Below, in pieces: positions 1-52,774 of a stretch of DNA of 64,000 nt (position 1 is its first letter; each line of letters opens with the position of its first letter). The notes under the pieces are model-generated. The model worked only from the letters and a program-made list of their open reading frames with translations. It was not told the DNA's origin and did no database searches. A program made the position numbers and the translations under genes. The DNA lies in IMG/VR virus record IMGVR_UViG_3300027985_000843, positions 1 to 64,000 of that record; one strand, written 5' to 3'.

Positions 1-1
1 A

Positions 2-148
2 AAAGATTCCTCTTTGGGGTACACCCTCGAAAACTGTGTGCCGTGTTGTGGAACCTGTAACGTAGCGAAGTTGCACAGGCCCTACGATGATTTCATCAAC
101 GACATCAAGAGAAGATACGAGCATCTTAAAAACAAGGGTATCTTGTGA
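2..148 (+). CDS. HNH endonuclease, C-terminal fragment (5' end outside window)
   Basis: Frame 2 reads KDSSLGYTLENCVPCCGTCNVAK...KGIL*, the DSSxGY-x-N-CVPCC-xx-CN-xx-K signature of phage HNH nucleases. Confidence 0.8.
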   Translation, partial: KDSSLGYTLENCVPCCGTCNVAKLHRPYDDFINDIKRRYEHLKNKGIL

Positions 149-461
149 GAAACTTTACCTTGTCACTAGAAAAGACCTATTGCCTGGATACCAGGCGGTT
201 CAAGCATGCCACGCTATGGCCCAGTTTCAGGTAGACTTCCCCGAGGTTGCCAAGTTTTGGTACGAACAATCGAACTACCTCGCCCTCCTCGCGGCCCCTG
301 ACGAGGAGGCCCTCACGCAGCTCCTAGAACGGGCCTCGTGGCGAGGCATCCCCGCCGTGGGGTTCAGGGAGCCGGACCTCGACAACGCCCTCACAGCGGT
401 CGCTCTAGCTCCCGCAGGTAAGGGTTTGGTCCGGAGGCTCCCCCTGGCCCTGGCCGGCTGA
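87..461 (+). CDS. Peptidyl-tRNA hydrolase, PTH2-like
   Basis: KLYLVTRKDL..G..AVQACHA...FREPDLDNALTAVALAP motifs; start uncertain because it overlaps the HNH ORF. Confidence 0.8.
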   Translation: MISSTTSREDTSILKTRVSCEKLYLVTRKDLLPGYQAVQACHAMAQFQVDFPEVAKFWYEQSNYLALLAAPDEEALTQLLERASWRGIPAVGFREPDLDNALTAVALAPAGKGLVRRLPLALAG

Positions 462-536
462 CCTTGGTGTATGCTCCATGCCATGCGAGTAGACGAGCGT
501 TTTCTCAGGGCCGAAGCGGCCGCCCTGATCGGTTGA

Positions 537-546
537 TCTACCTATG
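537..546 (+). promoter_or_regulatory. Class III (putative late) promoter motif
   Basis: TCTACCTATG, 13 nt before ATG 560. Confidence 0.65.
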
Positions 547-559
547 CCGCCGTGATGGC

Positions 560-1309
560 ATGGAGTCGATCATCGCAAAAGCTGTCAATCGGTACCTCGT
601 GGCGAAAGTCATCAACCGCTACCTCGACCGAATTGGGAGGGCGCCCTTCCAGATGTCCATGGGCGGATGGGACGGAGTCGACCACTACTGGCCGACCTTC
701 AAGGACTTCGAGAACTGGTCCGAGAAGCGTGACCGTTGGGGCCACACCTACGAGGCCATGTACCAATACGACAGCACGAGCGAGAGCGGCTTCGGTCCCA
801 CGCTCAACCTGTTCGTCGACTTCGACGCCGCCAAGTACGTCGACACGAGCGGCAGCCAACCGATCAAGTGGGAAGCCACCTTCCACGGATCATCCAAGAA
901 GGGCACGGTTCGGAAGGTCGAGGACATCCGAGGGCTGATGGACAACCTGATCCGGGAAGCCAAGAAGGTCCGCGACAAGATCCAGGACCAGCTCAGCAGC
1001 GCAGGCGGCACCAACTGGGACACGCACTTCGATGGGTACGAGCTTTCGGCTCAGTTCCACAGCCCTCATCCTGAGAGCGAAGCCAGCATGACCGTGGTCT
1101 TCGACGAGCCCGACGAGGTCCTGTTCGGGACCAGCGGCGAGAAGGGGAATGCCCGCATCTGGTTCTCACTCGGATCCGATTACGAAGGACACTTTGGCAA
1201 GAAAGAAGTCACCAAGTCCTACAAGACCACAGGTGACGTCGAAAAGGTCCTCAAGGAAGCCGAAAAGCTCTTCGATAAGTGGTACCAGGAAGCCCAGCCG
1301 AAAGACTGA
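560..1309 (+). CDS. Hypothetical protein, putative virion-associated, with two N-terminal xV(I)NRYL motifs
   Basis: MESIIAKAVNRYLVAKVINRYL; start reassigned to 560 from class III motif spacing. Confidence 0.7.
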   Translation: MESIIAKAVNRYLVAKVINRYLDRIGRAPFQMSMGGWDGVDHYWPTFKDFENWSEKRDRWGHTYEAMYQYDSTSESGFGPTLNLFVDFDAAKYVDTSGSQPIKWEATFHGSSKKGTVRKVEDIRGLMDNLIREAKKVRDKIQDQLSSAGGTNWDTHFDGYELSAQFHSPHPESEASMTVVFDEPDEVLFGTSGEKGNARIWFSLGSDYEGHFGKKEVTKSYKTTGDVEKVLKEAEKLFDKWYQEAQPKD

Positions 1310-1336
1310 CTCGGCCTCCACCCCTTCCCAGCCAAC

Positions 1337-1343
1337 CGGTGTA
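1337..1343 (+). promoter_or_regulatory. Class II promoter motif upstream of tRNA
   Basis: CGGTGTA, 11 nt before tRNA 5' end. Confidence 0.65.
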
Positions 1344-1354
1344 TGTTCTGACCT

Positions 1355-1430
1355 GGGTCCGTCGTCCAGTGGTTAGGGCAGCGAATTTTAATCTCGCCTA
1401 TCGGGGGTTCGAATCCCCTCGGACCCGCCA
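1355..1430 (+). tRNA. tRNA with apparent TTA anticodon (ochre suppressor); Glu/Gln-like body; encoded CCA
   Basis: Acceptor GGGTCCG/CGGACCC, D arm GTCC-AGTGGTTA-GGGC, anticodon arm GCGAA-TTTTAAT-CTCGC, T arm GGGGG-TTCGAAT-CCCCT, 3' GCCA. The tRNA call is firm; the anticodon register is less so. Confidence 0.88.
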
Positions 1431-1449
1431 GAGCGAAAGGGTGGTTACC

Positions 1450-2349
1450 ATGGCAACGTTCGAAGACAGGGCACGGCTCCTGGACAGTATCGACATACAG
1501 TACATCCAGGCGTCTAAGTGGAAAGACAAGCGACGTCAGGACCTGGAGCTGTTCGAATCGGTCGAGCTGCCCCTGGACCCCGACCACTGGTGTAGCCTGT
1601 GCATGAGCGAGGGAGCCTCCTACGTCGGAGGCTGCTGCGGGACCATGTCCCACGTCCAGGACCTGCTCGAACATGTCTTCCGCATGGGTAACGGATACAT
1701 CCGGATGAATCAGTTCGCCAATCTCGTCGAAGCCATCCTCGATCACGGCGACTTCGAAGGGAAGATCCGGTTCGACAAGTTGGATCGGTCCATCGAAGAC
1801 ATCGCGGCAGAAGCCAAGGACTGTAGCGTGTGGGAGAGCTACAGCCCCTGGGATCTCATCGCCCTCACCTGGCACCTGACCAAGGACTTCTACTCCCCCA
1901 AGACGCCTACTCCGTACAACCAAGACTTCTCCGAGGTCGAGAAGGCCATCCACACCCTGCATCACGGGGCGTCGACCCTGAGCTGGGCCCTTCTGTGTCA
2001 AAAAACCAGTACCCCCGACGGCGAGTTCGATCTGGCGAGCCAGAGCCGGGGCAACCGTTCCGTGCTGCTGTACCGGCTCATCCCCGCCCTCAGGACGCTG
2101 TTCAATCGAATCGACGAGCTTGACGCTGGCCCCTTCGATGGCGTGGCACTCGTGGACACAGAGATCGACCGCAACGCCATCGCCCACAACAACCTCGGGC
2201 TGTGCATCTTCGGTTCGGAAGAAGACGCTCGCAAGCTCGTTGCCTTGTTGGACGAGGACGAAGCCAAGAAGATCGAACTGCGCCCCGTACAGGTCTCGAA
2301 AGAAAACGGCGTCGTTTTCAAAGATTCTTCCGAACCTGCCAAGCTCTAG
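1450..2349 (+). CDS. Hypothetical protein
   Basis: Long ORF; ATG 1450 follows the tRNA with an AAAGGG SD-like element. Confidence 0.7.
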   Translation: MATFEDRARLLDSIDIQYIQASKWKDKRRQDLELFESVELPLDPDHWCSLCMSEGASYVGGCCGTMSHVQDLLEHVFRMGNGYIRMNQFANLVEAILDHGDFEGKIRFDKLDRSIEDIAAEAKDCSVWESYSPWDLIALTWHLTKDFYSPKTPTPYNQDFSEVEKAIHTLHHGASTLSWALLCQKTSTPDGEFDLASQSRGNRSVLLYRLIPALRTLFNRIDELDAGPFDGVALVDTEIDRNAIAHNNLGLCIFGSEEDARKLVALLDEDEAKKIELRPVQVSKENGVVFKDSSEPAKL

Positions 2350-2364
2350 CCCCGTAGTAGGGGC
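2330..2364 (+). promoter_or_regulatory. Class I (putative early) promoter
   Basis: CCGAAC-N17-CGTAGTA-N5-ATG(2365); only copy with a 17-nt spacer. Confidence 0.8.
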
Positions 2365-2877
2365 ATGACTACCTCAAACACCGAAATCAAGGTTGGCGAC
2401 TACGTCCGAAGCTTCGACTTTGCGAATCCTCGCGATGCTGAAGAAAACCGCGACCTGACCGGCCCGAACGCCTCCTACGTCGAGGGTACCGTCGTCGAAA
2501 TCGGCAAGGGCGACCCCGACGAGAACCCTGCGGGCTACACCTGCTACAAGATTCTCGTCCAAAAGTGGGTCTTGCATGGTAAGCCCATGAAGACCGGCGG
2601 CCACGTGTACCCGCCCGTCAACGGAACCCCCTCTTGGCTCGGTGGCTTCACTAATGGTGTCGAGAAGATCACCGTCACTCCGGTCACCGTCGAGCTGGGC
2701 GCCTACAATGGCAGCCCTTCCATCATCGCCAAAATGGAAGAAACCCTCAAATACATCGAGGATGGAGCCAAGTCGTGGGCCGGGACCCAAGAGGAATACG
2801 AAAAGTGGGCCCTGGACATCGCCAGCGGCATGCTCGTCTCAATCTCCACCAAGCTCGTGACGAAGGCAGCAAAATGA
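2365..2877 (+). CDS. Hypothetical early protein
   Basis: ORF directly after class I motif; N-terminal SH3-like IKVGDYV pattern. Confidence 0.75.
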   Translation: MTTSNTEIKVGDYVRSFDFANPRDAEENRDLTGPNASYVEGTVVEIGKGDPDENPAGYTCYKILVQKWVLHGKPMKTGGHVYPPVNGTPSWLGGFTNGVEKITVTPVTVELGAYNGSPSIIAKMEETLKYIEDGAKSWAGTQEEYEKWALDIASGMLVSISTKLVTKAAK

Positions 2878-3044
2878 GCAGCAATCAGCAAGCTCTGAGG
2901 TCCTTTGACGCCTACTGCGACTCCCTTCCGTCCAAGAAGAGAGCCGCCGTCCGACAAGCCTACGAGAAGGCTCGGGAGACGCACAACATCGCGGAGTCCA
3001 TCCGCATTGCCCTCAACTCCCCAGAAGCACAGACCAAACGATGA
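2874..3044 (+). CDS. Small hypothetical protein
   Basis: ATGA overlaps at both ends. Confidence 0.55.
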   Translation: MSSNQQALRSFDAYCDSLPSKKRAAVRQAYEKARETHNIAESIRIALNSPEAQTKR

Positions 3045-3262
3045 CCCAAGAAGAGCTGGAACAAGCCGCCAAGGAATTCTTGGCGGACAAGGACGGCTAT
3101 TCCCTGTGGTGTATAGCCACTGGGGGCCTTAGTTTCACGACGTACGAAGACGAGCTGGAGGCCAAGTACGGTGAGAGTGAACTTCAAGCCGTAAAGAACG
3201 CGATCTATCGAGAGGTGGATCGCATGAAGAATTCTCCGAACTCTTCTGAGCCGGGAGCGTAG
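3041..3262 (+). CDS. Small hypothetical protein
   Basis: ATGA overlap with upstream ORF. Confidence 0.6.
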   Translation: MTQEELEQAAKEFLADKDGYSLWCIATGGLSFTTYEDELEAKYGESELQAVKNAIYREVDRMKNSPNSSEPGA

Positions 3263-3269
3263 TAGGGAC
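3236..3269 (+). promoter_or_regulatory. Class I promoter
   Basis: CCGAAC-N16-CGTAGTA-GGGAC-ATG(3270). Confidence 0.85.
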
Positions 3270-3629
3270 ATGGCTACCCTCCTCGTCACTGACAAAAGCG
3301 GACTGGTTATCGGGCGCGTGTCGGCGAAAGCCGGAATGGTCACCCGCCACTGCGGAACCGTCACCCGATCGACGGCCATGGCCGTGTGGACTGACAAGCC
3401 GTCCTCACGCCTTCATGGCATGCATCGGCCCATCGCGTGTACCGTGAACTACACCAAGGAAATCGCGAACGATTCCACATTCGTTCCGTGCGGCTTCCTC
3501 AGTCAGAGGTCGGCGGACGAGCTTCGCGGGCAGCTCGCCAAGGGGCTGAGTGTTCGCGAAATCGCACGCAATTACGCGACCTACGTCGATACCGTCAAGC
3601 TGGTGCTCAACAGCTACCCCGCCAACTGA
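3270..3629 (+). CDS. Hypothetical protein, possible C-terminal HTH
   Basis: KGLSVREIARNYATYVDTVK resembles an HTH. Confidence 0.65.
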   Translation: MATLLVTDKSGLVIGRVSAKAGMVTRHCGTVTRSTAMAVWTDKPSSRLHGMHRPIACTVNYTKEIANDSTFVPCGFLSQRSADELRGQLAKGLSVREIARNYATYVDTVKLVLNSYPAN

Positions 3630-3682
3630 ATGAAGGGGGTGCGATCGTTCTCAGGGCCGACTCAACCAAGACACCGAAAATT

Positions 3683-3716
3683 CCGAACCTCTTCCGAGAT
3701 GGAGCGTAGTAGGGAC
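3683..3716 (+). promoter_or_regulatory. Class I promoter
   Basis: CCGAAC-N16-CGTAGTA-GGGAC-ATG(3717). Confidence 0.85.
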
Positions 3717-4259
3717 ATGAGCATCGAATTCACCTCTGACTGCCCCACCACCGAAACCACGAAGCCTGAGCCCTGCCTCTGTGCCCAGATGGCGGAACGG
3801 TGGATCGATGCCATGGATGGCGACTGGTCCGAGGCCGTCAAGGTCAACCTCAAGGCGGAAGCCAACCCCGCGTGCCCCTTCTGCAAGGGCACGGGTATTG
3901 AGGGATTCACCCGCGACGACCGCCCCCACATCAACTGGGCGAACGACAACGGTGTCCGCGTCCTCGCGACCCTGGGCATTGTTGGCGAAGATGCCCCCTA
4001 CGGCGAGATGACCATTGCGGAGGCCAGAAGGGCCGTCATGCGGGCCCGCTCTCGCTCCGACCTCTCTGCCTACACCCGGGAGGAAGAAGTTCGCCACGGG
4101 GCCCCCAGGGCCGACGAGAACGGTGTAGTAGAGCTGAAGCCCCTTCGGGTCTACAGCCCCTCCCTGGACGAGAACTCTATCCAGGATCGTATCGAGCAGT
4201 TCGCTCACTTCGTCGAGGAGTCTGCCGCCCGAGGAGCCACCCTCGTTCGTTGGGGTTAA
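3717..4259 (+). CDS. Hypothetical protein with CxxCxGxG zinc motif
   Basis: CPFCKGTG; start reassigned from class I motif. Confidence 0.7.
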   Translation: MSIEFTSDCPTTETTKPEPCLCAQMAERWIDAMDGDWSEAVKVNLKAEANPACPFCKGTGIEGFTRDDRPHINWANDNGVRVLATLGIVGEDAPYGEMTIAEARRAVMRARSRSDLSAYTREEEVRHGAPRADENGVVELKPLRVYSPSLDENSIQDRIEQFAHFVEESAARGATLVRWG

Positions 4260-4262
4260 GCC

Positions 4263-4484
4263 ATGAACAAGACACATCGAGCCGGAGTTCGGTACTCAGA
4301 CGGAAAGCAATGGTTCGCTCGCGGCAACTATCGGTCCTTCCTGACTGCGGAAGCTGCCGCAACCCGGTTGGCAAGGCCCACAGGGTCCCTGCCTCTCGTG
4401 AAGACCCCAGAGGGCAGCATCTTCTCTATCTGGGGCCCCGATCTGCCTTCGTACTGTTTCGGGTTGAAAGTTCCGAACCCTTGA
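4263..4484 (+). CDS. Small hypothetical protein
   Basis: ORF 3 nt after the upstream TAA, in frame with it. Confidence 0.55.
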   Translation: MNKTHRAGVRYSDGKQWFARGNYRSFLTAEAAATRLARPTGSLPLVKTPEGSIFSIWGPDLPSYCFGLKVPNP

Positions 4485-4506
4485 CGGCCGGGAGCGTAGT
4501 AGAAGC
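4473..4506 (+). promoter_or_regulatory. Class I promoter
   Basis: CCGAAC-N16-CGTAGTA-GAAGC-ATG(4507). Confidence 0.85.
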
Positions 4507-4788
4507 ATGAACACCAACAGCGAACTGCGGGCCATTGTCGAGAACCTCTGCACCAATCTCTCTACCAACAAGGTCCCCTGCAAGACCAACCACGTCGTTC
4601 TGAGCTTCGGCTGTGCCAATGGTGAATGGGCCTGGGGTATCGTGGTTGCAGCCGTCGGGAGCGTCGCCTCCAAGCATAAGGGCTACCGCCCTCGCCTCTG
4701 CGGAGAGGGTGAGACTCCTTCGGCAGCCATCGACGACATGCTGTCCGCACCGGCCTACGGTCGATGGCGTAAGGACCTCGCAAAATAA
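4507..4788 (+). CDS. Hypothetical early protein
   Basis: ORF directly after class I motif. Confidence 0.65.
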   Translation: MNTNSELRAIVENLCTNLSTNKVPCKTNHVVLSFGCANGEWAWGIVVAAVGSVASKHKGYRPRLCGEGETPSAAIDDMLSAPAYGRWRKDLAK

Positions 4789-4790
4789 TT

Positions 4791-4824
4791 CCGAACCCTT
4801 GACCTCCGGGAGCGTAGTAGAGAC
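4791..4824 (+). promoter_or_regulatory. Class I promoter
   Basis: CCGAAC-N16-CGTAGTA-GAGAC-ATG(4825). Confidence 0.85.
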
Positions 4825-4959
4825 ATGACGACCTCAACCAACCCCACCTACACCGCTGCCCAACGCCGCTTCTGGGCCCCCAAGGGACAGCGGAACTACT
4901 ACCAGCATGCTGTCGCCCGTTACCGCCGTCCTTCCGATGCGGCTGTCCTTCTTTCGTAA
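4825..4959 (+). CDS. 44-aa early microprotein (absent from ORF track)
   Basis: MTTSTNPTYTAAQRRFWAPKGQRNYYQHAVARYRRPSDAAVLLS*, ATG at exact class I spacing. Confidence 0.6.
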   Translation: MTTSTNPTYTAAQRRFWAPKGQRNYYQHAVARYRRPSDAAVLLS

Positions 4960-5257
4960 GCTGTTTCGTAACCCGTACCGAGTTCCGGCAGAGCAGGCCG
5001 TAACGCCCGAGCCCCCTCCCGTGGTTCACGCAAGGACAAGCAAGGATCGAGAACACGTTACCGAGTTCGAGATGACTCTCTTTCAGGCCAACAAGTGCCC
5101 AGACTGCGAGCAGGAAGGGTTCCTGGAAGGGCCTCACGGTGGGCTGTGCGTCAACTTCAAGTGTGCCAACCCTCAGTGCGGGAGCCGGTTCAACCACATG
5201 GGCCCCTTTGGGATCGATCGCATCTCCGATGCCAGCCCAGACAAGGTATCTCAGTGA
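4937..5257 (+). CDS. Zinc-ribbon protein
   Basis: CPDC...EGPHGG...C..PQCGSRFN. Confidence 0.6.
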   Translation: MRLSFFRKLFRNPYRVPAEQAVTPEPPPVVHARTSKDREHVTEFEMTLFQANKCPDCEQEGFLEGPHGGLCVNFKCANPQCGSRFNHMGPFGIDRISDASPDKVSQ

Positions 5258-5448
5258 ACTACTACGTCGCGTGCCGAGACGACCGCCGACCTGACGGCAC
5301 CAAAGGCCGTTATGTTATGTCCTCTCGCACATTCACTCAACTTCGAGACGCTGTTGAGTACAAGAAAAGCATTTCTCCCTCGCGGGAGCCCATGATCCTC
5401 GTCGAGGTCAAAGTGTCCGACGAGAATGTTCAGGAGTTCGTCGGATGA
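5254..5448 (+). CDS. Small hypothetical protein
   Basis: GTGA/ATGA overlaps with neighbours. Confidence 0.5.
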   Translation: MNYYVACRDDRRPDGTKGRYVMSSRTFTQLRDAVEYKKSISPSREPMILVEVKVSDENVQEFVG

Positions 5449-5990
5449 CCACCCTCAAGCCTCCGTACCGATTCCGAGACATTCCATGCTTCACGCCCTT
5501 CACGGGCTATTCGGTGGACGTCTCGTGGCAGCATTTGGAGTCTCACATCAAGGCTGAGACGGAAGGGGCCAACGTCGACTTCAACCCCGACTTCCAGCGG
5601 GGCCATGTGTGGCCGATGAGCAAGCGGATCGCCTATGTCGAGTTCGTTCTGCGAGGTGGCAACTCAGCCAACAACCTGTACTTCAATTGCGGATCGTATC
5701 AGTTGGTGAGCGGGCCGCCCCGGGAGTACGTCCTTGTGGACGGCAAACAACGGCTGACCAGCGTCCGGATGTTCCTCAACGATGAGGTACCCATCTTCGG
5801 TGGCCTCGTCCGCAGTGACTTCGTGGACAGGCCCGACTTCCTCAAGGCCCGGTTCCGGTGGAACGTCAACAGTCTCCAGACGCGGGCAGAGATCCTCCAA
5901 TGGTACCTCGATCTCAACACCGGTGGTGTAGTCCATACGGACGCAGAGATCGAGCGGGTCCGCAAGCTGCTGGAAGCGGAGAAGGCGTGA
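5445..5990 (+). CDS. DUF262 (GmrSD N-terminal, ParB/Srx-like) domain protein
   Basis: NPDFQRGHVW and VLVDGKQRLTSV motifs, LNTGG. Confidence 0.85.
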   Translation: MTTLKPPYRFRDIPCFTPFTGYSVDVSWQHLESHIKAETEGANVDFNPDFQRGHVWPMSKRIAYVEFVLRGGNSANNLYFNCGSYQLVSGPPREYVLVDGKQRLTSVRMFLNDEVPIFGGLVRSDFVDRPDFLKARFRWNVNSLQTRAEILQWYLDLNTGGVVHTDAEIERVRKLLEAEKA

Positions 5991-6042
5991 TGACCCCAAA
6001 GGTGGCCCACAACCTATTGAATGGTGGGACTACGAGGCAGCC

Positions 6043-6351
6043 ATGAGCACACCACACCACCCAACCTTCGTTGTGTTTGACGACCGCGAGCCCGATGGGC
6101 TCGGGCGCCGCGCCTTCACCCTCTTCTGGCTCTCGGACGGGATCTTCCGTCCGGAGCTGCATAAGGACGGCAAGCCCGTCGGGTACCGCCGAGCCCAGTG
6201 CTTCTGTACACAGCCTGATCGGTTCCTCAAGGATGGGGCCGAGGTCGTGACAGAACCAGAGGCCGAGTCGCAAATGGCTGAGCTACACGAGGAGCTGATT
6301 CATGCTCGTGACGCATACCGAGCCGCACGAGGAGATGATTCATGCCCGTGA
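6043..6351 (+). CDS. Hypothetical protein
   Basis: ORF with GAGG SD, in operon. Confidence 0.55.
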   Translation: MSTPHHPTFVVFDDREPDGLGRRAFTLFWLSDGIFRPELHKDGKPVGYRRAQCFCTQPDRFLKDGAEVVTEPEAESQMAELHEELIHARDAYRAARGDDSCP

Positions 6352-7646
6352 CACATCATGAGCTGAGGTGGCGTTGCTCAATCTCGACCTGTTGTCACGA
6401 AAACCGTGGTCGGGACAAGAATTGCCGGAACTGTGGCAAGCCAAAGGAAGGGGAGGTGTTCTACGACCCCGAAGAGGGCGAGGGCCCCGCCCTCACGGAT
6501 GCGGTCCTCATCCAGCAAGCAACAGCTGGAACTGACTGGCAGTGCACTTTCTGTGGCTCGCATCAACGACGCAGCAGCGGAGAGTGCGCCAACTGCGGAG
6601 CTGAGCAAGCCATGAGCCGCGACCAGGCGACCAAGTGGGACGATGGTCACGTGGGTGAGGGTGGCCTAAGCCCGGCAGAAGAGGAACGTGTCGAGGCCCT
6701 GCTGAAGGCTGCGAAGCGTGTCGAGGCCCTGCCCAAGCCCAAGCGTCGCCCCAAGCTGACAGATGAGGACGTCGAGGAGATCTGCTCGGAAGACCCCTCC
6801 CCATCTTCCACTGTCATTGCAACCCCGGTGCCCGTCTACCGGCGAAACTATCGGCCTTTGGCCCTTGGCAGTGCCTTGTTCTTCGGAATTCTACTTCTTG
6901 GGGCCCTGGTCTTCTTCTTAGTTCGGCCTGTGGAAGTGGATGCCCGTGTTCAGGGCGTCTCATGGAAATACACGGTCCAGGTGGAGCGGGAGAAGACTGT
7001 GCACGAGGAAGGGTTCGACGCTCCCATCGGGGCCTTCGATGTGCTTCCCATGGGGGAGAGGCATCACCACTACCGACAGGTGCCGGACGGCTTCAGGACG
7101 GTGAGCTACCTGGAGGAATACCAGTGTGGGACTATTCCTCGGACCTGTACGCGCACACCCAGGACCTGCACACGCACGCCTCGAACCTGCACGAACAACC
7201 AAAACGGTTTCAAGACGTGCATGGGTGGGGATGAAATATGCTCGGGAGGACAGGAGAGTTGCACCGGCGGCGGCCCAAGGTATTGCACTCGCCCGGCCAC
7301 AAGGCAGGAGCCCAAGTTCCGGGACGAGTCGGTCACGGCCATGTGGTACTCGTGGAACGTGTGGCGATGGGTCCTGGACCGGCAGGTGAAGGCAGAGGGC
7401 TCAACAGACAAGCCTCATTGGCCGTCAGCCGAGAAGATTGCCCTCAACAAGAATCTGCCCAATGGTGTCCGGGCGGAGAGGGAGGAAAGGGTCACGAGCT
7501 ATACGGTGACCTTCCGGGATGACGAAGGAGAGAGCTACACGTACCACCCGAAAGAGATTGGCGAGTTCGAGAGCTTCCACGCTGGTGAGCCCCAGCTCAT
7601 CAAGGTCAACAAGCTGGGCAGTGTCGAGATTGTGAGGGCCCAGTGA
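6342..7646 (+). CDS. Zinc-finger, single-TM, Cys-rich membrane protein
   Basis: Two N-terminal W-x-C..C..N..C..CG fingers, TM LALGSALFFGILLLGALVFFLV, Cys-rich distal region. Confidence 0.75.
   Translation: MPVTHHELRWRCSISTCCHENRGRDKNCRNCGKPKEGEVFYDPEEGEGPALTDAVLIQQATAGTDWQCTFCGSHQRRSSGECANCGAEQAMSRDQATKWDDGHVGEGGLSPAEEERVEALLKAAKRVEALPKPKRRPKLTDEDVEEICSEDPSPSSTVIATPVPVYRRNYRPLALGSALFFGILLLGALVFFLVRPVEVDARVQGVSWKYTVQVEREKTVHEEGFDAPIGAFDVLPMGERHHHYRQVPDGFRTVSYLEEYQCGTIPRTCTRTPRTCTRTPRTCTNNQNGFKTCMGGDEICSGGQESCTGGGPRYCTRPATRQEPKFRDESVTAMWYSWNVWRWVLDRQVKAEGSTDKPHWPSAEKIALNKNLPNGVRAEREERVTSYTVTFRDDEGESYTYHPKEIGEFESFHAGEPQLIKVNKLGSVEIVRAQ
7137..7193 (+). repeat. Degenerate 21-nt tandem repeat encoding (PRTCTRT)x~3
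   Basis: Protein reads PRTCTRTPRTCTRTPRTCT with synonymous divergence between units. Confidence 0.8.
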
Positions 7647-35371: not shown

Positions 35372-35826
35372 ACCCTGATATCCTCGTGGATGCCCTGGCT
35401 GTGTTCGTCCTTTTGGCGGCCTTTGCCGTAGTGAAGTGGTCTCGCAAGTGGCTCAATCAAATCACCAGCCTTAATAACCAAGTCGGCGGTCTTGAGAGCC
35501 AGATTAGGATCCTCAAGGAAACGGTCCGCAGCAGGGAACAAGATCTCAACATCCTCAAAGAGGTCTCTGAGCATCGATGCTCCGAGTTCGAAGCCCGGCG
35601 GGCCGATCAAGCAGTGGAAAACGATCGACTGCGAAGGTACATTGCGTCTTTGCAGCGAGAAATTCAATCATTAAAGCGAGTCGACCAACACCAGATGAAT
35701 GTGCGGCACGACGCAAACGTGCCTCGCGAACCCCAACCACCCTCCGAACCACCACCGTCAGTCTTTCAACGTCTCGAACGCGATGATATATGGGACGCTG
35801 GCCCATGGGACACCGATCCGTCATGA
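35368..35826 (+). CDS. TM plus coiled-coil protein with C-terminal SVFxRL motif
   Basis: Ends PPSVFQRLERDDIWDAGPWDTDPS. Confidence 0.7.
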   Translation: MNPDILVDALAVFVLLAAFAVVKWSRKWLNQITSLNNQVGGLESQIRILKETVRSREQDLNILKEVSEHRCSEFEARRADQAVENDRLRRYIASLQREIQSLKRVDQHQMNVRHDANVPREPQPPSEPPPSVFQRLERDDIWDAGPWDTDPS

Positions 35827-37514
35827 AAAAGCGTATTCTTGCTGCCGTAGCAGTCTTTGCTTCTATCTCAGCTGCTGTCGTCTATGCACCCGACGCCGTT
35901 CGCTGGTACATCGAGGACACCTATCCCGACGTCGACCTTCATGGGGACGTTCACCTCGTGTGGGGCGGCGTGGAACTGACCAATGTCGCGGTCCATCGGC
36001 CGGGGCTCGACGCCACGCTGGACCGCGTGCACGTCAGTGCCGAGAAACGGGTCACTGTGCGTGGTGGAAGGGTCGCCCTGAACCTGGACACCCTTGAGGG
36101 CGGAGAAGGCCAGGAAGGGGTACCAGGGGGCGGGCATGAGGGCGTTTCAATCACCGCCTCCGAACTCAATGTCGAAGCGAAGCGAGGGGACATCCACGCC
36201 CGGCTCACAGACGTCGACGTGAATCCCTCTCGCGTGTGCTTTCGCGTCGGTGCTGTGTTCCGAGGCGACCTTCTTGCGAACGTGTGGCAAGGGTGCATGC
36301 CTCGGGACAGGTCGAAGCTGACAGCATGGCGGGTAGAAGTCCCGGTGAAGCTGCCCTTTGATGTTCCCCGAGTCGACACTCAACAGGTCGTTCGCGTGTC
36401 GAATGCGGAAGTCGTCTTGGCGGACAAGCTCGTGAGGTTCGCTTCCGCCTCCATGGGGCCATTCACAGTGATCGGGCCCGCCACGGTCAAGCTGTCGGAC
36501 GACACCGTGTTCTTCGATGCCCCACAGATTTCTGTCGATCACCCGTGGGTGTCCCCCACCCTCGCCACGTTCGACCACGCGTCTCTCACAGCACCCCTCA
36601 GCCTGTTCCAAACGGGGAAGGGGGCCTTCCGAGTTCGGATTGGGAACGCCACCATCCATCTCGACCCGGAGACTCATTCCGTGCGAGGCGACGAGGCTTG
36701 CGGAGATTGGCTGGACATCCTACCGCACCCCCTGCCCGAGGCCATGGACGACATGCAAGAGCACTTCCACGGCCGTCTGAGGTTCGAGGTGGGGGCCAAG
36801 CCCACGCCCTACCTCAACATCAAGCACAACTGCACTTACGATTGCAGTGCCCAGCCGATTGCGGACATTCGAAAAGGGTCCACAAGCTACATGGCCTACG
36901 GCTCGGACGGATCGCTCTTTGAGCGGCGTGTCGGGCGAAACACCCCAGGATGGGTTCGGATAGCGGACCTACCCCCTCATGTGCCCCGCGCGTTCATTCT
37001 GCTGGAGGACCCCGGGTTCCAAAGCCATCACGGGATTCACGTCATGGCCCTCCAGAACAGCCTGATCGCTAACCTTGAGAAGGGCGAGTTCGTAAAGGGC
37101 GGGTCCACCATCTCGATGCAGCTCTCGAAGAACCTGTGGCTTCGCCGGCACAAGACCGTCGGCCGCAAGGCTCATGAAGCCCTGCTCACAGTCGCTCTGG
37201 AATCGTGTCTCAGCAAGGCAGACATCCTGGAGTGGTACGTCAACGTGGTCGAATACGGTCCGGACCTGTACGGGCTAGGGCCCGCCGCGAAGCATTACTT
37301 CGACAAGTCTGCGCAGAACCTCGAACCCGACGAGGCATTCTACCTCGCCAGTCTTCTGCCCCGGCCTTCTCGGGCAGTCCCTCCGAAGCAAGGTGGGCTC
37401 GCCCGAGCCCACCGCCTCATGAGGATGCTCGCTCGCAGTGGCTTCATTTCTGAACATCTCATCCCAATTGAGCCCGGCGAAGTCAACGCTACTGGCTGGG
37501 AGGTGAATGAGTAA
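35823..37514 (+). CDS. Peptidoglycan transglycosylase (GT51, monofunctional/MtgA-like)
   Basis: EDPGFQSHHG, GGSTISMQLSKNL, RKAHE, KADILEWYVN, LASLLP motifs; N-terminal signal anchor. Confidence 0.9.
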   Translation: MKKRILAAVAVFASISAAVVYAPDAVRWYIEDTYPDVDLHGDVHLVWGGVELTNVAVHRPGLDATLDRVHVSAEKRVTVRGGRVALNLDTLEGGEGQEGVPGGGHEGVSITASELNVEAKRGDIHARLTDVDVNPSRVCFRVGAVFRGDLLANVWQGCMPRDRSKLTAWRVEVPVKLPFDVPRVDTQQVVRVSNAEVVLADKLVRFASASMGPFTVIGPATVKLSDDTVFFDAPQISVDHPWVSPTLATFDHASLTAPLSLFQTGKGAFRVRIGNATIHLDPETHSVRGDEACGDWLDILPHPLPEAMDDMQEHFHGRLRFEVGAKPTPYLNIKHNCTYDCSAQPIADIRKGSTSYMAYGSDGSLFERRVGRNTPGWVRIADLPPHVPRAFILLEDPGFQSHHGIHVMALQNSLIANLEKGEFVKGGSTISMQLSKNLWLRRHKTVGRKAHEALLTVALESCLSKADILEWYVNVVEYGPDLYGLGPAAKHYFDKSAQNLEPDEAFYLASLLPRPSRAVPPKQGGLARAHRLMRMLARSGFISEHLIPIEPGEVNATGWEVNE

Positions 37515-39786: not shown

Positions 39787-40923
39787 ATGGTGACACCTAG
39801 CGATATCGGCTGGGGCAAGTACAGCCAGTATGAAGGCCCCTACTTCAGAGGTACCCGCAAGTTCCAGCTCCCGGCCAAGCCCTCCGAGGAGCACAGACTG
39901 CTGGCGGTCATCACGAGCACCGAAGGCGGCTCCTTCGACGCCATCAACATGTACGATCGATGCATCTTGAGCACCGGCTTGCTTCAGTGGTGCGAGGCGA
40001 AATACTTCCTCACGTCGAACCTGCTCGGCGCCATTGCGGCCGCAGACCCCTCCCTTCTTCAGCCATTGCAGGCAGCCCTCCAGGCCGCCGATGCCCAGTT
40101 CGTCGAGAAGAGCCCAGGCAAGTGGCGGTTCTTCTGGCGGGAACCCCGCAATGAGGTCGACGATGCGGTAGAGCAGGCGAAGCTTTTCCTTCTCGACTCG
40201 TCCGGCCACCAAGGGAGCTGGAACGAGACGTCGAAGCACTACGCCAACCTGTGGGCCGCCAAAATTGCCAGCGTGCTCGCCCAGGATGCCGCGATCGAGA
40301 TCCAGACTCAGTACACGGCCAACCGAGTCAAGATGTTCGCCACCCCGGCCGCCTCCAGAATCCTCTTCGATGGTACCCCGTCCACGGGCTGGACGGGGGC
40401 CACACGGGCCATCTACCTGTCCTTTGCTGCCAACCTCCCTGCCGCCGCCTCGACGCAATTGCAGGCCGCTGTAGCCGAGACAGGAGCCGCCAAGTGGAGC
40501 AAGGAGTGGTGCATCCACATCTCCCGCCGCCTGACCTTCGGCCCGAACATCTCCATCTACCCTCACCGGTACAACGCCATCCGGCCCGTCGTCGAGAAGC
40601 TCTACGGCGTCGATCTGCCGGACATGGCCGGGGAGCTTCAGGTGTGGAAGGGCGAGCAGGGACTCGGGGACGTGTCCGACGAAGATATCCTGAGCGAGGA
40701 ACTGCACGAGCCGACCTTCACGACCGTCAAGGAGGTCCAGCGGCTCCTCGTCGACATGGGCTACGACCTCGGGCCCGCCGGGGCCGACGGGGTCATGGGT
40801 CGCAAGACGAAGGAAGCCCTCCTGGTCTTTCAGGGGAACGCAGGGCTGAAGGCTGACGGATTGATTGGGCCCAAGACGCGGGCCGCGATGGTCACGGCGT
40901 GGCGGGACAAGGTGTGCGCCTAG
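39787..40923 (+). CDS. Lysozyme-like domain plus C-terminal PG-binding domain (endolysin-like)
   Basis: TEGGSFDAINMYD...GLLQW; VKEVQRLL..GY...ADGVMG..T..A...FQ...LKADGLIGPKT. Confidence 0.8.
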   Translation: MVTPSDIGWGKYSQYEGPYFRGTRKFQLPAKPSEEHRLLAVITSTEGGSFDAINMYDRCILSTGLLQWCEAKYFLTSNLLGAIAAADPSLLQPLQAALQAADAQFVEKSPGKWRFFWREPRNEVDDAVEQAKLFLLDSSGHQGSWNETSKHYANLWAAKIASVLAQDAAIEIQTQYTANRVKMFATPAASRILFDGTPSTGWTGATRAIYLSFAANLPAAASTQLQAAVAETGAAKWSKEWCIHISRRLTFGPNISIYPHRYNAIRPVVEKLYGVDLPDMAGELQVWKGEQGLGDVSDEDILSEELHEPTFTTVKEVQRLLVDMGYDLGPAGADGVMGRKTKEALLVFQGNAGLKADGLIGPKTRAAMVTAWRDKVCA

Positions 40924-51083: not shown

Positions 51084-51427
51084 AACGTCGAGCTTTTCTT
51101 CAGGTGCTTGCTGTCACAGCAGTGCCGCTGGTGGGGTCTTTCCAAGGCGACACTGAGGACGCCTACATTCAGCTCTACGACGGCGACAAGGCGGTGACCA
51201 AGCCGCTACCCACCAAGTTCAGGTGGAACAGCAAGATGACGGTCACGGTCCAACCCTCACAACCTATCCGAGTGACCCGTGCTGTCCTGTACTCCCCCAA
51301 GGTGGGCCGAAGGAATCACGACATCGACCCCCTCATCATCAAGCCTTCGACTGAATTAACGGTGACTTGGGAGATCGGCGCGGTTTCCTCAAAAGATTTT
51401 CCGAACTCCTCCCGACGGCGAGCGTAG
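51080..51427 (+). CDS. Putative Tat-exported protein
   Basis: GTG start after AGGAG: MKRRAFLQVLAVTAVPLVG, a twin-arginine RRxFL signal. Confidence 0.6.
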   Translation: MKRRAFLQVLAVTAVPLVGSFQGDTEDAYIQLYDGDKAVTKPLPTKFRWNSKMTVTVQPSQPIRVTRAVLYSPKVGRRNHDIDPLIIKPSTELTVTWEIGAVSSKDFPNSSRRRA

Positions 51428-51434
51428 TAGGGAC
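51401..51434 (+). promoter_or_regulatory. Class I promoter
   Basis: CCGAAC-N16-CGTAGTA-GGGAC-ATG(51435). Confidence 0.85.
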
Positions 51435-51812
51435 ATGGCGTGGATTGATACACTCAAGGTTGGGGACAAGGTGATCGTTGACCATGGCGGGTGGCCTAGC
51501 ACTTCACACCTGCGCACGGTTACGCGTCTGACGAAGACGCAGATCATCTTGAACAACGACGCGAAGTACAACCGAAAAACCGGTCATAAGGTCGGGACGG
51601 GGATCTACTACTCCTCATCCCTCCGGGAAGCCACGCCGGAAGCCCTCAAGGAAATGCAGCAGCTCAGGGCTCTCACGAAGGCCAAGCGAGAGCTTTGGGA
51701 CTTCGCGGAGAAGATCAACAGGATGTCAGTGCATGAGATCCATCGAGACGAGGCCCTGTCGAGCAAGCTGCAACAGATCACCGACAGCATCAGGGAAGGA
51801 TCGGAATCATGA
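51435..51812 (+). CDS. Hypothetical early protein
   Basis: LKVGDKV...VTRLTKTQI. Confidence 0.7.
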   Translation: MAWIDTLKVGDKVIVDHGGWPSTSHLRTVTRLTKTQIILNNDAKYNRKTGHKVGTGIYYSSSLREATPEALKEMQQLRALTKAKRELWDFAEKINRMSVHEIHRDEALSSKLQQITDSIREGSES

Positions 51813-52774
51813 CAGCCGAAGTCGAAACCATGTTCAGCGTTCGAGACGTCCCGTGGCACGGTATGGGGGTCATCCTCGACAACCCGCCGACCCCCGCTGA
51901 AGCCATCCGCCTCGCCGGCCTCGACTGGGAAGTTGCCAAGCAGCCCCTCTACTGCAAGCTGGAGGGACAGGAGAAGTCCGCCCCCGCTTACGCAACCGTG
52001 CGCCTGACGGATCAAAGCATTCTCGGGATCGTCGGGCCCTCCTACACAGTGGTCCAGAACGCCAAGGCGTTCGACTTCTTCCAACCCTTCATCGACTCCG
52101 GTGCCGTCACCATCGAAACGGCCGGAAGCCTCAAAGAAGGTCGCCGGGTCTGGATTCTCGCCCGGATCAAGGAAGATCCCGTTGAAATCCTGAAGAACGA
52201 CCCCGTCAAGCGCTACATGCTCCTGAGCAACAGCCACGACGGGACGCTCGCAGTACGTGCCGGATTCACCGGGATTCGAGTGGTGTGCTCGAACACCCTA
52301 CAGTGGGCCCACAAGGAAGGCGCAATCCTGCGCATCCGGCACAGCCGCAACGTGCACGACGCTCTCAGCCTCGTGCAGAACGTGATGGACGTCGCCAACC
52401 GCGAGTTTGCCGGGACCGTCGAGCAGATGAAGGCCATGGTCCGCAAGGGTGTCGTCGACGTGGACATCGCTAAGTACGTCCGCGAGGTCTTCCGCCCCAA
52501 GGTCTTCGTCACCAAGGGGGAGGAAGAGCGGTACGACAAGGAAGGCGCCGGCCAGATCATCGCCAAGGTGCTCCCTCTCTTCCAAGAGGAGAATGAGCGG
52601 ATGCCGGCGGCGAGTGGTACCGCCTGGACGATGTACAACGCCGTGACGGCCTTCCTTACCCACCAGCGGGGCCGAGATCAGTCCTCGCGGCTCGACTCCC
52701 AGTGGTACGGAGACTCGGCTGTCAAGAGCCGCAAGGCCCTCACGGTCGCCACCAAGTTCGCCGCTTTCGGGTGA
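51809..52774 (+). CDS. DUF932/DUF945 (phage/plasmid-like TIGR03299) protein
   Basis: PWHGMG, AGLDWEV, YTVVQN..AF.F, ETAGSL.EGRRVW, LSNSHDG, IRVVCSNTL, IRHS, GTAW..YNAVT. Confidence 0.9.
   Translation: MTAEVETMFSVRDVPWHGMGVILDNPPTPAEAIRLAGLDWEVAKQPLYCKLEGQEKSAPAYATVRLTDQSILGIVGPSYTVVQNAKAFDFFQPFIDSGAVTIETAGSLKEGRRVWILARIKEDPVEILKNDPVKRYMLLSNSHDGTLAVRAGFTGIRVVCSNTLQWAHKEGAILRIRHSRNVHDALSLVQNVMDVANREFAGTVEQMKAMVRKGVVDVDIAKYVREVFRPKVFVTKGEEERYDKEGAGQIIAKVLPLFQEENERMPAASGTAWTMYNAVTAFLTHQRGRDQSSRLDSQWYGDSAVKSRKALTVATKFAAFG

What the first reader, a model, noticed from the sequence alone, without database searches (positions are those of the whole stretch)
1355..1430. tRNA with UUA anticodon (ochre suppressor) in an apparently standard-code genome
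Seen: canonical cloverleaf spacing puts the loop at TTTTAAT, so positions 34-36 are TTA. The stem is GCGAA/CTCGC with an A31-C39 mismatch. The D arm and G73 look Glu/Gln-like (TTC or TTG are one change away). The alternative Lys(TTT) register needs two mismatches and loses base 26. ORFs end normally in TAA, TAG and TGA, so wholesale recoding is not evident. Inference: regulated read-through of UAA/UAG, or interference with host termination. It has its own class II promoter, and a peptidyl-tRNA hydrolase gene lies about 900 bp upstream.
Basis: partly seen in the sequence, partly recalled or inferred. Interest (0 to 1): 0.75.

Follow-up and report, generated by a model that had tools for sequence, protein, structure and literature searches.

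The report
Phage tRNA that reads stop UAA
A giant virus of bacteria from a hydrothermal-vent sample carries a well-formed, promoter-equipped tRNA whose anticodon matches the stop codon UAA although the virus uses the ordinary genetic code; such lone "suppressor" tRNAs are known in phages, but this one shares an unusual anticodon arm with three unrelated phage tRNAs.

Summary
Window 1355-1430 (+) is a canonical 76-nt tRNA (ARAGORN; Rfam tRNA 54.3 bits). Its anticodon is UUA (1388-1390), with an A31·C39 mismatch, G73 and an encoded CCA.

The window is the first 64 kb of a 372-kb jumbo-phage record from a hydrothermal-vent metagenome. The phage also has 46 tRNAs and a tmRNA in one array 246 kb away on the other strand.

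The genome uses the standard code. Code 11 gives the highest coding density, TAA ends about 12% of genes, and no gene is interrupted by TAA. I found no read-through target, no release factor and no Glu/Gln synthetase.

The tRNA sits behind a perfect copy of a phage promoter motif (CGGTGTATGNT; 9 in the window, 0.04 expected). The spacing puts the predicted transcript start at tRNA base 1. No terminator lies before the next ORF.

Identity elements fit glutamine best (loop UUUUAAU, G73, G2-C71, G3-C70, G10).

New here: Sinorhizobium phage phiN3, a 39%-GC IMG/VR contig and a soil metagenome contig each carry a UUA tRNA with the same arm (N-CGAA-UUUUAAY-CUCG-N). The tRNA bodies are otherwise unrelated. 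Versions with 31-39 repaired were not found.

Most likely it is a real, weak ochre suppressor of unknown purpose. Function is untested.

The parts
1355..1430 (+). tRNA gene with anticodon UUA (ochre-suppressor type), 76 nt. It has a G73 discriminator and an encoded CCA.
   Evidence: ARAGORN. Rfam RF00005, 54.3 bits. Cloverleaf is the MFE fold. An independent assembly is identical.
1381..1397 (+). Anticodon arm GCGAA-UUUUAAU-CUCGC. The anticodon TTA is 1388-1390. A31 (1385) and C39 (1393) are unpaired, so the arm is effectively a 4-bp stem with a 9-nt loop.
   Evidence: The same arm (N-CGAA-UUUUAAY-CUCG-N) occurs in three other phage or metagenome tRNA(UUA) genes with different bodies.
1337..1347 (+). 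Phage 'class II' promoter-like motif CGGTGTATGTT, with a -10-like TATGTT. tRNA base 1 lies 17 nt after the start of the GGTGTAT core. That is where the ATG of leaderless genes sits behind this motif.
   Evidence: The motif occurs 9 times in the window against 0.04 expected. The genome has 102 GGTGTAT sites, and 47 have an ATG exactly 16-17 nt downstream. The transcription start is inferred, not measured.
1436..2349 (+). Shine-Dalgarno-like AAAGGGTGG (1436-1444) and an ORF of 299 aa (ATG 1450, TAG 2347-2349). It is probably co-transcribed with the tRNA. It is an ORFan.
   Evidence: No terminator-like site lies between the tRNA and the ORF. There are no Pfam, PHROG, IMG/VR or Atlas relatives. 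The same frame is open upstream across the tRNA to 1279, which I read as chance in a 59% GC genome.
147..461 (+). PTH2-type peptidyl-tRNA hydrolase gene. It is a neighbour with no demonstrated link to the tRNA.
   Evidence: PF01981, E 4.8e-07, 30.4 bits. phrog_1866 and phrog_3668 'hydrolase'.
533..1309 (+). Upstream ORFan (258 aa), which ends 46 nt before the tRNA. It has its own class II motif at 466.

Best explanation
This is a genuine, transcribed phage tRNA gene whose anticodon UUA pairs with the stop codon UAA, and by wobble with UAG. In other words it is an ochre-suppressor-type tRNA, carried by a jumbo phage that otherwise uses the standard code.

Shown:
- The gene, its anticodon register and its intact tRNA architecture.
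- A perfect copy of a phage promoter motif in front of it.
- The standard code of the genome.
- The same anticodon arm in three unrelated phage tRNA(UUA) genes.

Inferred:
- Transcription starts at or next to tRNA base 1, and the tRNA is the 5' part of a transcript that continues into ORF 1450-2349.
- A host synthetase charges it, most probably GlnRS with glutamine. The loop UUUUAAU is the tRNA-Gln(UUG) loop with G36 changed to A, and G73, G2-C71, G3-C70, G10, U35, A37 and U38 are E. coli GlnRS identity elements (my knowledge of the identity set, not tested here).
- It then competes with release factors at UAA, and less at UAG. This gives low-level C-terminal extension rather than a code change.
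- The conserved 4-bp stem with unpaired A31·C39 is a functional feature of this class of phage tRNA, not decay. It may tune decoding or synthetase choice.

The selected benefit is unknown. Candidates are host sabotage, one read-through product, insurance against nonsense mutations, or a pre-adaptation to recoding.
For: A real tRNA in the UUA register:
- Searches agree on the gene and the register.
- All other hits to the tRNA model in this genome score 26-68 bits, so 54.3 bits is ordinary for this phage.
- The 31-39 mismatch is not a sign of a pseudogene here. Two of the 46 other tRNAs (Ser-UGA, Thr-CGU) also lack that pair, and 5 lack 27-43.

Promoter:
- CGGTGTATGTT at 1337-1347 matches the consensus cCGGTGTATg.t.
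- tRNA base 1 lies at motif+17, like the ATGs of 47 genes.
- There is no terminator before the next ORF.

Standard code:
- Coding density is 0.899 under code 11, against 0.880, 0.870 and 0.697 with TAA, TAG or TGA read through.

Gln-like body:
- The best blastn match of the central part is the tRNA-Gln(UUG) of cyanophage S-PM2.
- The variable loop has 5 nt, unlike the 4-nt loop typical of tRNA-Glu (my knowledge).

Shared anticodon arm:
- phiN3 tRNA-TERM (63.4 bits), IMG/VR contig G001 (62.8 bits) and metagenome contig L058 (52.9 bits) all have CGAA-UUUUAAC-CUCG with a non-canonical 31-39 in Infernal's alignment.
- Arm identity is 14-16 of 17, while the other stems share 13-16 of 32.
- The same pattern with 31-39 changed to A-U, G-C or G-U gave 0 hits in IMG/VR.
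- All 12 hits in 596 Gb of prokaryote genomes are not tRNAs.

Precedent in the literature:
- A crAss-like phage has tRNA-Gln TTG changed to TTA without any TAA reassignment (PMC7886860).
- Jumbo phage XacN1 has two CUA suppressors with no targets found (PMC5852040).
- tRNA-Sup(UUA) is among the bacterial tRNA species with the most 4-bp anticodon stems, 20.5% (PMC13092985).
- The 31-39 pair shifts U35 suppressors between LysRS and GlnRS (PMC1483225).
Against: No target or genomic adaptation was found:
- Same-frame coding after the stop is seen for 19% of TAA genes, against 16.5% for TAG and 10.5% for TGA. Every TAA junction shows an ordinary ATG or GTG start.
- The top gene pairs are separate genes by Pfam.
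- There is no avoidance of TAA and no excess of tandem stops.

Other points against:
- G001 ends 69 of its 129 genes in TAA and has this tRNA as its only tRNA. An efficient UAA suppressor would hurt it, so either suppression is weak or the molecule does something else.
- The four tRNAs have different discriminators (G, A, U, A) and acceptor stems, so no common amino acid is evident.
- G1-C72 in place of U1-A72, and A36, weaken the case for Gln. A36-A37-U38 lacks the A36A37A38 context of tRNAs that read U-starting codons (my knowledge).
- There is no expression or charging data. No RNA run was listed.
- The arm-sharing set was partly found by searching for the arm itself, which is an ascertainment bias, and it has only four members.
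Confidence: 0.5

Rival explanations
1. A selectively neutral or decaying tRNA. A spare Glx-type tRNA picked up a G36-to-A change ('suppressor pre-emergence') and persists because weak ochre suppression costs little. It has no selected function.
For: - One base separates it from UUG.
- The phage already has tRNA-Gln UUG and CUG and tRNA-Glu UUC and CUC in its array.
- No targets or adaptations were found.
- The same scenario is described for a crAss-like phage (PMC7886860).
- Zeta crAss-like phages carry suppressors that appear inactive (PMC12386605).
Against: - It is not a recent copy of the phage's own Gln or Glu tRNAs. The best global match to any tRNA in the genome is 54-56 of 76.
- It lies alone, 246 kb from the array, behind a perfect promoter motif.
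- All tertiary nucleotides are intact.
- The same arm, mismatch included, recurs in three unrelated phage tRNA(UUA) genes, while repaired versions were not found.
Confidence: 0.2
2. A tRNA that does not act as a suppressor. The conserved arm would be the working part, for example as a decoy or inhibitor of a host anticodon-arm nuclease. It could also be a nuclease-proof stand-in for tRNA-Lys(UUU), with the 9-nt loop A-UUUUAA-Y-C presenting UUU.
For: - The arm is conserved while the acceptor stems and discriminators differ.
- It is the only tRNA of G001, a genome with 53% TAA stops.
- The window's arm contains UUUUAAUC, the same 8-mer as U33-C40 of E. coli tRNA-Lys (my recollection of that tRNA), which includes the U36AAUC40 stretch that PMC12409363 gives around the PARIS AriB cleavage site.
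- Phage tRNAs that escape or neutralise tRNA-cutting defences are established (PMC11464382, PMC11555353, PMC12409363).
Against: - In the Lys register the stem pairs poorly: 3 of 5 pairs in the window, and fewer in the three others, which have C38 (read from the sequences).
- Infernal and ARAGORN both choose the UUA register in all four.
- G000 already has ordinary tRNA-Lys UUU and CUU.
- All four look like complete tRNAs that could be charged.
- No defence system or nuclease is linked to any of them here.
Confidence: 0.15
3. Part of a hidden code change. TAA would be read as an amino acid in some genes, perhaps late genes or genes in the missing ~22% of the genome.
For: - Code-switching phages usually carry the matching suppressor tRNA (bioRxiv 10.1101/2021.08.26.457843).
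- The record is only about 78% complete, and 39 kb more lies upstream of the window in another assembly.
Against: - Coding density falls when TAA is read through.
- TAA-terminated genes are spread over all regions and all gene lengths.
- Every candidate junction has a normal start codon and separate domains.
- No release-factor gene was found.
- A survey of 10,754 jumbo phages reported no TAA recoding (PMC13037316).
Confidence: 0.03
4. Sequencing or assembly error. The true anticodon would be UUG (Gln) or UUC (Glu).
For: Only one base differs. No raw reads could be inspected. The two runs may be one data set and the source of the record.
Against: - A second assembler's 89-kb contig at about 10.5x word depth is identical over 5.5 kb, with no variant listed.
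- Three other phage tRNAs have TTA in the same arm.
Confidence: 0.02

Closest known systems
Predicted suppressor tRNAs in standard-code phages: XacN1 (two CUA; PMC5852040), the crAss alpha-group tRNA-Gln TTG to TTA (PMC7886860), and the tRNA-TERM of Sinorhizobium phage phiN3 (KR052482)
   Same: A phage tRNA with a stop-codon anticodon in a genome with no sign of reassignment and no identifiable target. In the crAss case the tRNA is Gln-derived and has a TTA anticodon. phiN3 has the very same anticodon arm.
   Different: - It is not a one-step mutant of a neighbouring sense tRNA in an array.
- It stands alone with its own promoter, 246 kb from the array.
- It has an unpaired 31-39.
- It is a UAA reader in a 59% GC genome, where TAA is the rarest stop (12%).
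E. coli ochre suppressor supB (tRNA-Gln with UUA) and phage T4 psu ochre suppressors
   Same: The anticodon is UUA on a Gln-type loop (UUUUAAU), with G73, G2-C71, G3-C70 and G10. The expected behaviour is weak insertion at UAA and UAG in competition with RF1 and RF2 (my knowledge of these classic suppressors).
   Different: Those are laboratory mutants of sense tRNAs with a paired 31-39 and U1-A72. This one is a natural gene with G1-C72 and A31·C39. Its charging is untested.
Suppressor tRNAs of code-switching phages (Lak, crAss-like, Jade, Agate and others; TAG to Q, TGA to W)
   Same: A phage-encoded tRNA cognate to a stop codon, expressed during infection.
   Different: Those genomes have in-frame recoded stops in late genes, higher coding density under the alternative code, and sometimes release-factor or synthetase genes. 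None of this is present here. Surveys do not report TAA recoding (PMC13037316).
tRNAs with 4-bp anticodon stems (Blastocrithidia-like tRNA-Trp CCA that reads UGA; bacterial survey PMC13092985)
   Same: One terminal pair of the anticodon stem is missing. The survey lists tRNA-Sup(UUA) among the species with the highest share of 4-bp stems (20.5%).
   Different: In the studied cases the stem is open at the top (27-43), the loop keeps 7 nt, and the effect is near-cognate reading. Here the bottom pair (31-39) is open, which gives a 9-nt loop, and the anticodon is already cognate to UAA. The survey set aside the tRNA-Trp(CCA) genes whose stem is open at the bottom and did not study them.
Phage tRNAs that evade or neutralise tRNA-cutting defences (T5 tRNA-Lys versus PARIS AriB; retron and PrrC evasion)
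   Same: A phage tRNA whose anticodon arm departs from the host norm. It contains a Lys-like UUUUAAUC stretch. It is a lone tRNA in two of the four carriers.
   Different: Those tRNAs keep a sense anticodon and replace a depleted host tRNA. This one reads as UUA in the only well-paired register. No link to any defence system was found.

Membership tests
tRNA (Rfam RF00005) | Covariance-model score above the gathering threshold, over the full-length cloverleaf | tested here: met
   54.3 bits against a threshold of 29, model positions 1-71 of 71. ARAGORN agrees. The MFE fold is the cloverleaf.
tRNA (Rfam RF00005) | Conserved tertiary and processing nucleotides: U8, A14, G18G19, U33, GTTC, A58, C61 and the 3' CCA | tested here: met
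   All are present in the alignment and the sequence. CCA is encoded at 1428-1430.
Ochre (UAA) nonsense-suppressor tRNA | Anticodon UUA at positions 34-36 in the best-supported register | tested here: met
   ARAGORN and Infernal place TTA at 1388-1390. The Lys register costs two stem pairs and base 26.
Ochre (UAA) nonsense-suppressor tRNA | It is aminoacylated and inserts an amino acid at UAA in vivo | not testable with these tools
   No expression or charging data. No RNA run was listed.
Stop-codon-recoding phage system (suppressor tRNA plus recoded genes) | In-frame stop codons of the matching kind inside genes, and higher coding density when that stop is read through | tested here: not met
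   Density is 0.899 (code 11) against 0.880 with TAA read through. TAA junctions are ordinary gene boundaries.
Stop-codon-recoding phage system (suppressor tRNA plus recoded genes) | Accessory genes that shift termination (RF1 or RF2) or charging (a synthetase) | tested here: not met
   PF00472, PF03462 and PF00749 are absent from the 372 kb held. The record is about 78% complete.
tRNA-Gln-type body (GlnRS substrate, supB-like) | E. coli GlnRS identity set: U35, G36, A37, U38, G73, weak U1-A72, G2-C71, G3-C70, G10 | tested here: inconclusive
   Present: U34, U35, A37, U38, G73, G2-C71, G3-C70, G10. Absent: G36 (it is A) and U1-A72 (it is G1-C72). The identity set comes from my knowledge and PMC9976931. 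The host and its synthetases are unknown.
tRNA-Glu-type body | U11-A24, U13·G22, a 4-nt variable loop (no base 47), U2-A71, C36 | tested here: not met
   The tRNA has U11·G24, C13-G22, a 5-nt variable loop CUAUC, G2-C71 and A36. Only the D-arm sequence resembles phage tRNA-Glu.
4-bp anticodon-stem tRNAs (Blastocrithidia-like) | The stem is shortened by loss of the top pair (27-43), with a 7-nt loop kept | tested here: not met
   G27-C43 is paired. The lost pair is the bottom one, A31·C39.
Phage tRNA(UUA) group with the shared arm N-CGAA-UUUUAAY-CUCG-N (proposed here) | C28-G42, G29-C41, A30-U40, unpaired A31·C39 and loop UUUUAAY, in a full tRNA called UUA | tested here: met
   Window, phiN3, G001, L058. 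Only four members, partly found by searching for the arm.

The most novel reading that the evidence does not exclude
Phages of very different lineages and base composition (39-59% GC) carry a dedicated class of UAA-cognate tRNA. The class is defined not by its body but by one anticodon arm: a 4-bp stem CGA/UCG plus a variable 27-43 pair, an unpaired A31·C39, and the loop UUUUAAY. The arm was found in viral and metagenome contigs, but in none of the tRNAs of about 186,000 prokaryote species genomes. The arm would then be a selected module that spread by transfer or arose by convergence. It would make a tRNA act on UAA codons, or on a host factor that recognises this arm, during infection of standard-code hosts. 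That would be a translation-takeover or counter-defence device distinct from code switching.
Probability: 0.2. Interest if true: 0.8.

Novelty: new variant of a known kind. Interest (0 to 1): 0.5.

Why it matters
Lone suppressor tRNAs in phages that do not recode are a standing puzzle. They have been explained as inert leftovers, or as first steps toward a new genetic code. UAA readers are the least expected, because both release factors recognise UAA and no phage is reported to have reassigned it.

This case offers three things. It is a clean, promoter-driven example in a very large phage that brings nearly a full translation tRNA set. It gives a concrete, testable clue: an anticodon arm with an open 31-39 pair, shared by four unrelated phage tRNAs. 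And it links to recent work on shortened anticodon stems and stop-codon reading.

If the arm proves functional, it would define a new tool by which phages manipulate termination or tRNA-directed immunity. It would also be a natural scaffold for engineering ochre suppression. If it proves inert, that supports the 'pre-emergence' view of how code change begins.

Tried and rejected
- **Relatives through flanking genes.** ORFs 533-1309 and 1450-2349 have no relatives in IMG/VR, so conservation of the anticodon at this position in related phages could not be tested.
- **Relatives through the tRNA body with a free anticodon.** No hits in IMG/VR.
- **Isotype by similarity to E. coli tRNAs.** Only the generic T-arm matched.
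- **Klebsiella phage phiKp24 'tRNA-Sup-TTA' (PMC8386662).** It is a weak hit (26.8 bits, below threshold) with a different, poorly formed arm, so it is not comparable.
- **Prokaryote genomes.** All 12 hits to the arm pattern are non-tRNA chance matches. The second metagenome hit (L059) and GenBank MT837836 are also not tRNAs.
- **A shared neighbour gene among the four carriers.** The only shared protein is a sigma-70 family factor about 4 kb away in G001 and L058, which is too generic to mean anything.
- **Read-through targets.** The best same-frame pairs after TAA are separate genes with ordinary starts. They include a baseplate-J protein, an SNF2 helicase and an N6/N4 methylase. ORF 1450-2349 ends in TAG with the next ORF in frame, but that ORF has its own promoter and ATG.
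- **Lys(UUU) reading.** Rejected on pairing. A true tRNA-Lys(UUU) containing the string GAATTTTAATCTC pairs perfectly in the other register, which shows that the tools can tell the two apart.
- **Host identification.** The nearest clusters of a transglycosylase point loosely to Myxococcota and Acidobacteriota. I do not rely on this.
- **Expression.** No RNA run was listed.
- **Raw reads.** Only assembler contigs were available.

Full report
**What is there.** The window holds one tRNA gene, at 1355-1430 on the + strand. ARAGORN calls it tRNA-Stop with anticodon tta at position 34. Infernal matches it to Rfam tRNA over the whole model at 54.3 bits, against a threshold of 29. Both use the same register:
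- acceptor GGGUCCG/CGGACCC
- D arm GUCC-AGUGGUUA-GGGC
- anticodon stem GCGAA/CUCGC, with A31 (1385) facing C39 (1393)
- loop UUUUAAU, with U34-U35-A36 at 1388-1390
- a 5-nt variable loop, T arm GGGGG-UUCGAAU-CCCCU, discriminator G73 and an encoded CCA

The cloverleaf is also the minimum-free-energy fold. There the anticodon arm is drawn as a 4-bp stem with a 9-nt loop.

**Whose gene it is.** The window is the first 64 kb of a 371,739-bp IMG/VR virus record, linear and estimated 78% complete, with 59% GC. Two public runs labelled hydrothermal-vent metagenome hold it. A second assembler's 89-kb contig is identical over window 1-5500 and runs 39 kb further upstream. That is not a raw-read check, and the runs may be the source of the record.

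The phage has 46 further tRNAs covering all 20 amino acids, plus a tmRNA. All lie on the minus strand between 247.5 and 276 kb. The UUA tRNA is therefore a loner, 246 kb away and on the other strand. It is no close copy of any array tRNA: the best global match is 54-56 of 76.

**Is the code changed? No.** I used a crude codon-usage gene caller of my own.
- Code 11 gives 479 genes and 89.9% coding. Reading TAA, TAG or TGA through lowers this to 88.0%, 87.0% and 69.7%.
- Stops are TGA 295, TAG 127 and TAA 57.
- After a TAA, coding sequence continues in the same frame in 19% of cases, against 16.5% for TAG and 10.5% for TGA.
- Every such TAA junction shows an ordinary ATG or GTG start a few codons on.
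- The four strongest pairs are distinct genes by Pfam, among them a baseplate-J protein, an SNF2 helicase and a DNA methylase.
- TAA use is even across regions and gene lengths. Backup stops are not enriched after TAA.
- The 372 kb held contain no release factor and no Glu/Gln-tRNA synthetase.

So there is no recoding, and I found no read-through target.

**Expression signals.**
- GGTGTAT occurs 102 times in the genome, and in 47 cases an ATG follows exactly 16-17 nt after its start. The consensus is cCGGTGTATg.t....gcATG.
- The longer form CGGTGTATGNT occurs 9 times in the window against 0.04 expected.
- With TATGnT read as a -10 element, the spacing puts the transcript start on the ATG, which implies leaderless mRNAs. 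This is inference.
- In front of the tRNA the motif is perfect (1337-1347), and tRNA base G1 lies at motif+17. The predicted primary transcript therefore begins at the mature 5' end.
- No terminator-like site follows. Twenty bases after the CCA, an ORF of 299 aa starts behind a Shine-Dalgarno-like AAAGGGTGG. The tRNA probably forms the 5' part of that transcript.
- That ORF and the one upstream have no relatives anywhere I looked.
- The PTH2-type peptidyl-tRNA hydrolase at 147-461 is confirmed, but nothing beyond proximity ties it to the tRNA.

**Which amino acid?** By similarity the 5' half is closest to a cyanophage tRNA-Glu and the central part to phage tRNA-Gln(UUG). By identity elements (my knowledge of the E. 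coli sets, and PMC9976931) glutamine fits best.
- For Gln: the loop UUUUAAU is the Gln(UUG) loop with G36 changed to A, and U35, A37, U38, G73, G2-C71, G3-C70 and G10 are present. G1-C72 replaces the weak U1-A72.
- Against Glu: U11·G24, C13-G22, a 5-nt variable loop and G2-C71.
- Against Lys: G73.

The 31-39 pair is known to tip U35-containing suppressors between LysRS and GlnRS (PMC1483225). An A·C there has not been tested. The host is unknown, so this remains an inference.

**The unexpected part.** A blastn search of GenBank phages pulled out the annotated 'tRNA-TERM' of Sinorhizobium phage phiN3. It is also UUA, and it has the identical stem GCGAA/CUCGC, including the A31·C39 mismatch, on an otherwise different A73 body.

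Pattern scans for the arm then found two more UUA tRNAs. One is in a 132.5-kb, 39%-GC IMG/VR contig (G001), where it is the only tRNA. The other is in a 13.6-kb, 46%-GC metagenome contig (L058). Infernal scores them at 63.4, 62.8 and 52.9 bits and marks 31-39 as non-canonical in each.

- Between the four tRNAs the 17-nt arm is 14-16 of 17 identical, while the other stems share 13-16 of 32. The discriminators are G, A, U and A.
- The 27-43 pair varies (G-C, G-C, A-U, A·G).
- The same pattern with 31-39 'repaired' to A-U, G-C or G-U gave no hit in IMG/VR.
- In 596 Gb of prokaryote genomes the arm pattern hit 12 places, none of them a tRNA.

Caveats: the set is small, and two members were found by searching for the arm itself. 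Within this phage an open 31-39 is not unique either, since 2 of the 46 other tRNAs have one. Still, the recurrence of one mismatched arm on unrelated bodies argues that the mismatch is a feature and not decay.

It fits a recent survey in which tRNA-Sup(UUA) is among the bacterial tRNA species with the highest share of 4-bp anticodon stems (20.5%). That survey set aside tRNA-Trp genes whose stem is open at the bottom and did not study them (PMC13092985).

**What it most likely does.** The simplest reading is a real, expressed, chargeable tRNA that competes weakly with release factors at UAA, and less at UAG. That makes it an ochre suppressor in a standard-code phage.

This is a known kind of oddity. 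XacN1 has two CUA suppressors without targets (PMC5852040). A crAss-like phage has tRNA-Gln TTG changed to TTA with no reassignment (PMC7886860). Some zeta crAss-like phages carry suppressors that seem unused (PMC12386605). A survey of 10,754 jumbo phages saw no TAA recoding (PMC13037316).

Suppression must be weak or conditional. G001 ends 53% of its genes in TAA yet keeps this tRNA as its only one, and G000 shows no adaptation to read-through.

The rivals are:
- a neutral 'pre-emergent' suppressor
- a non-decoding role for the conserved arm, such as a decoy for, or escape from, tRNA-cutting defences. The window's arm contains the Lys-like UUUUAAUC, which includes the stretch PMC12409363 gives around the AriB cleavage site.
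- hidden recoding in the missing part of the genome
- a base-call error

I rate these 0.20, 0.15, 0.03 and 0.02, and the suppressor reading about 0.5. None can be settled without expression, charging and reporter data.

**Verdict.** The proposed functions are plausible but unsupported by any target. As a lone suppressor tRNA it is a new example of a known phenomenon. The shared, mismatched anticodon arm is the part worth following up.

Noticed in passing
window 466, 1338, 11340, 14322(-), 26202, 28655, 44215(-), 45649(-), 63790 and about 90 more genome-wide: A promoter-like motif, cCGGTGTATg.t, sits a fixed 16-17 nt before the ATG of 47 genes. This implies that many phage mRNAs are leaderless. 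The sites are dense at 0-100 kb and 260-371 kb, and sparse at 100-240 kb, where Pfam hits include a baseplate-J protein.
   Followed up: partly
window 2325-2367, 3230-3272, 3677-3719, 19801(-), 51395-51437; also G000 at about 308994, 313787, 314000 and 369554(-): A second promoter class, TTCCGAAC-N15-CGTAGTAGGGrCATG, occurs about 12 times. It has an ECF-sigma-like -35 GAAC and -10 CGT, again placed directly before the ATG. I did not look for a phage sigma factor in G000.
   Followed up: partly
G000 247554-276034, minus strand (outside the window): An array of 46 tRNAs for all 20 amino acids, plus a tmRNA with tag ANDNSAMPVAA, interspersed with small ORFs that have their own promoters. Oddities: a tRNA with anticodon AUC (266398), an unassignable tRNA-like gene (248953), and a possible intron-bearing tRNA-Trp (262453-262541).
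   Followed up: no
window 1279-2349 (+): The reading frame of ORF 1450-2349 stays open upstream across the whole tRNA gene. A naive ORF caller therefore swallows the tRNA: the ORF listing starts it at 1279, and my caller at 1369.
   Followed up: partly
window 5445-5990, 35790-37514, 39787-40923, 51809-52774, 59028-60011: The few genes that can be annotated in a window of ORFans: a GmrSD N-terminal-domain protein, a 574-aa protein with a peptidoglycan transglycosylase domain, a protein with a PG-binding domain, DUF932, and a Dam-type (D12) adenine methyltransferase.
   Followed up: no
upstream of window position 1: Another assembly of the same sample has an 89,174-bp contig in which window base 1 is at position 39,472. 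The phage genome therefore continues at least 39 kb beyond the start of the record.
   Followed up: no
L051-L057 (G001, IMGVR_UViG_3300048997_000225), tRNA at 1624-1695: A 132-kb, 39%-GC virus contig, estimated 30% complete and using the standard code, with TAA as its main stop (69 of 129). Its only tRNA is the UUA tRNA with the shared arm, about 1.6 kb from the contig end. A sigma-70 family gene lies at 5567-6697.
   Followed up: partly
G000 tRNAs Lys-UUU (275831), Lys-CUU, Tyr-GUA, Glu-UUC, Arg-UCG: Five array tRNAs lack the top anticodon-stem pair (27-43). This is the 'Blastocrithidia-like' 4-bp-stem geometry discussed in PMC13092985.
   Followed up: no
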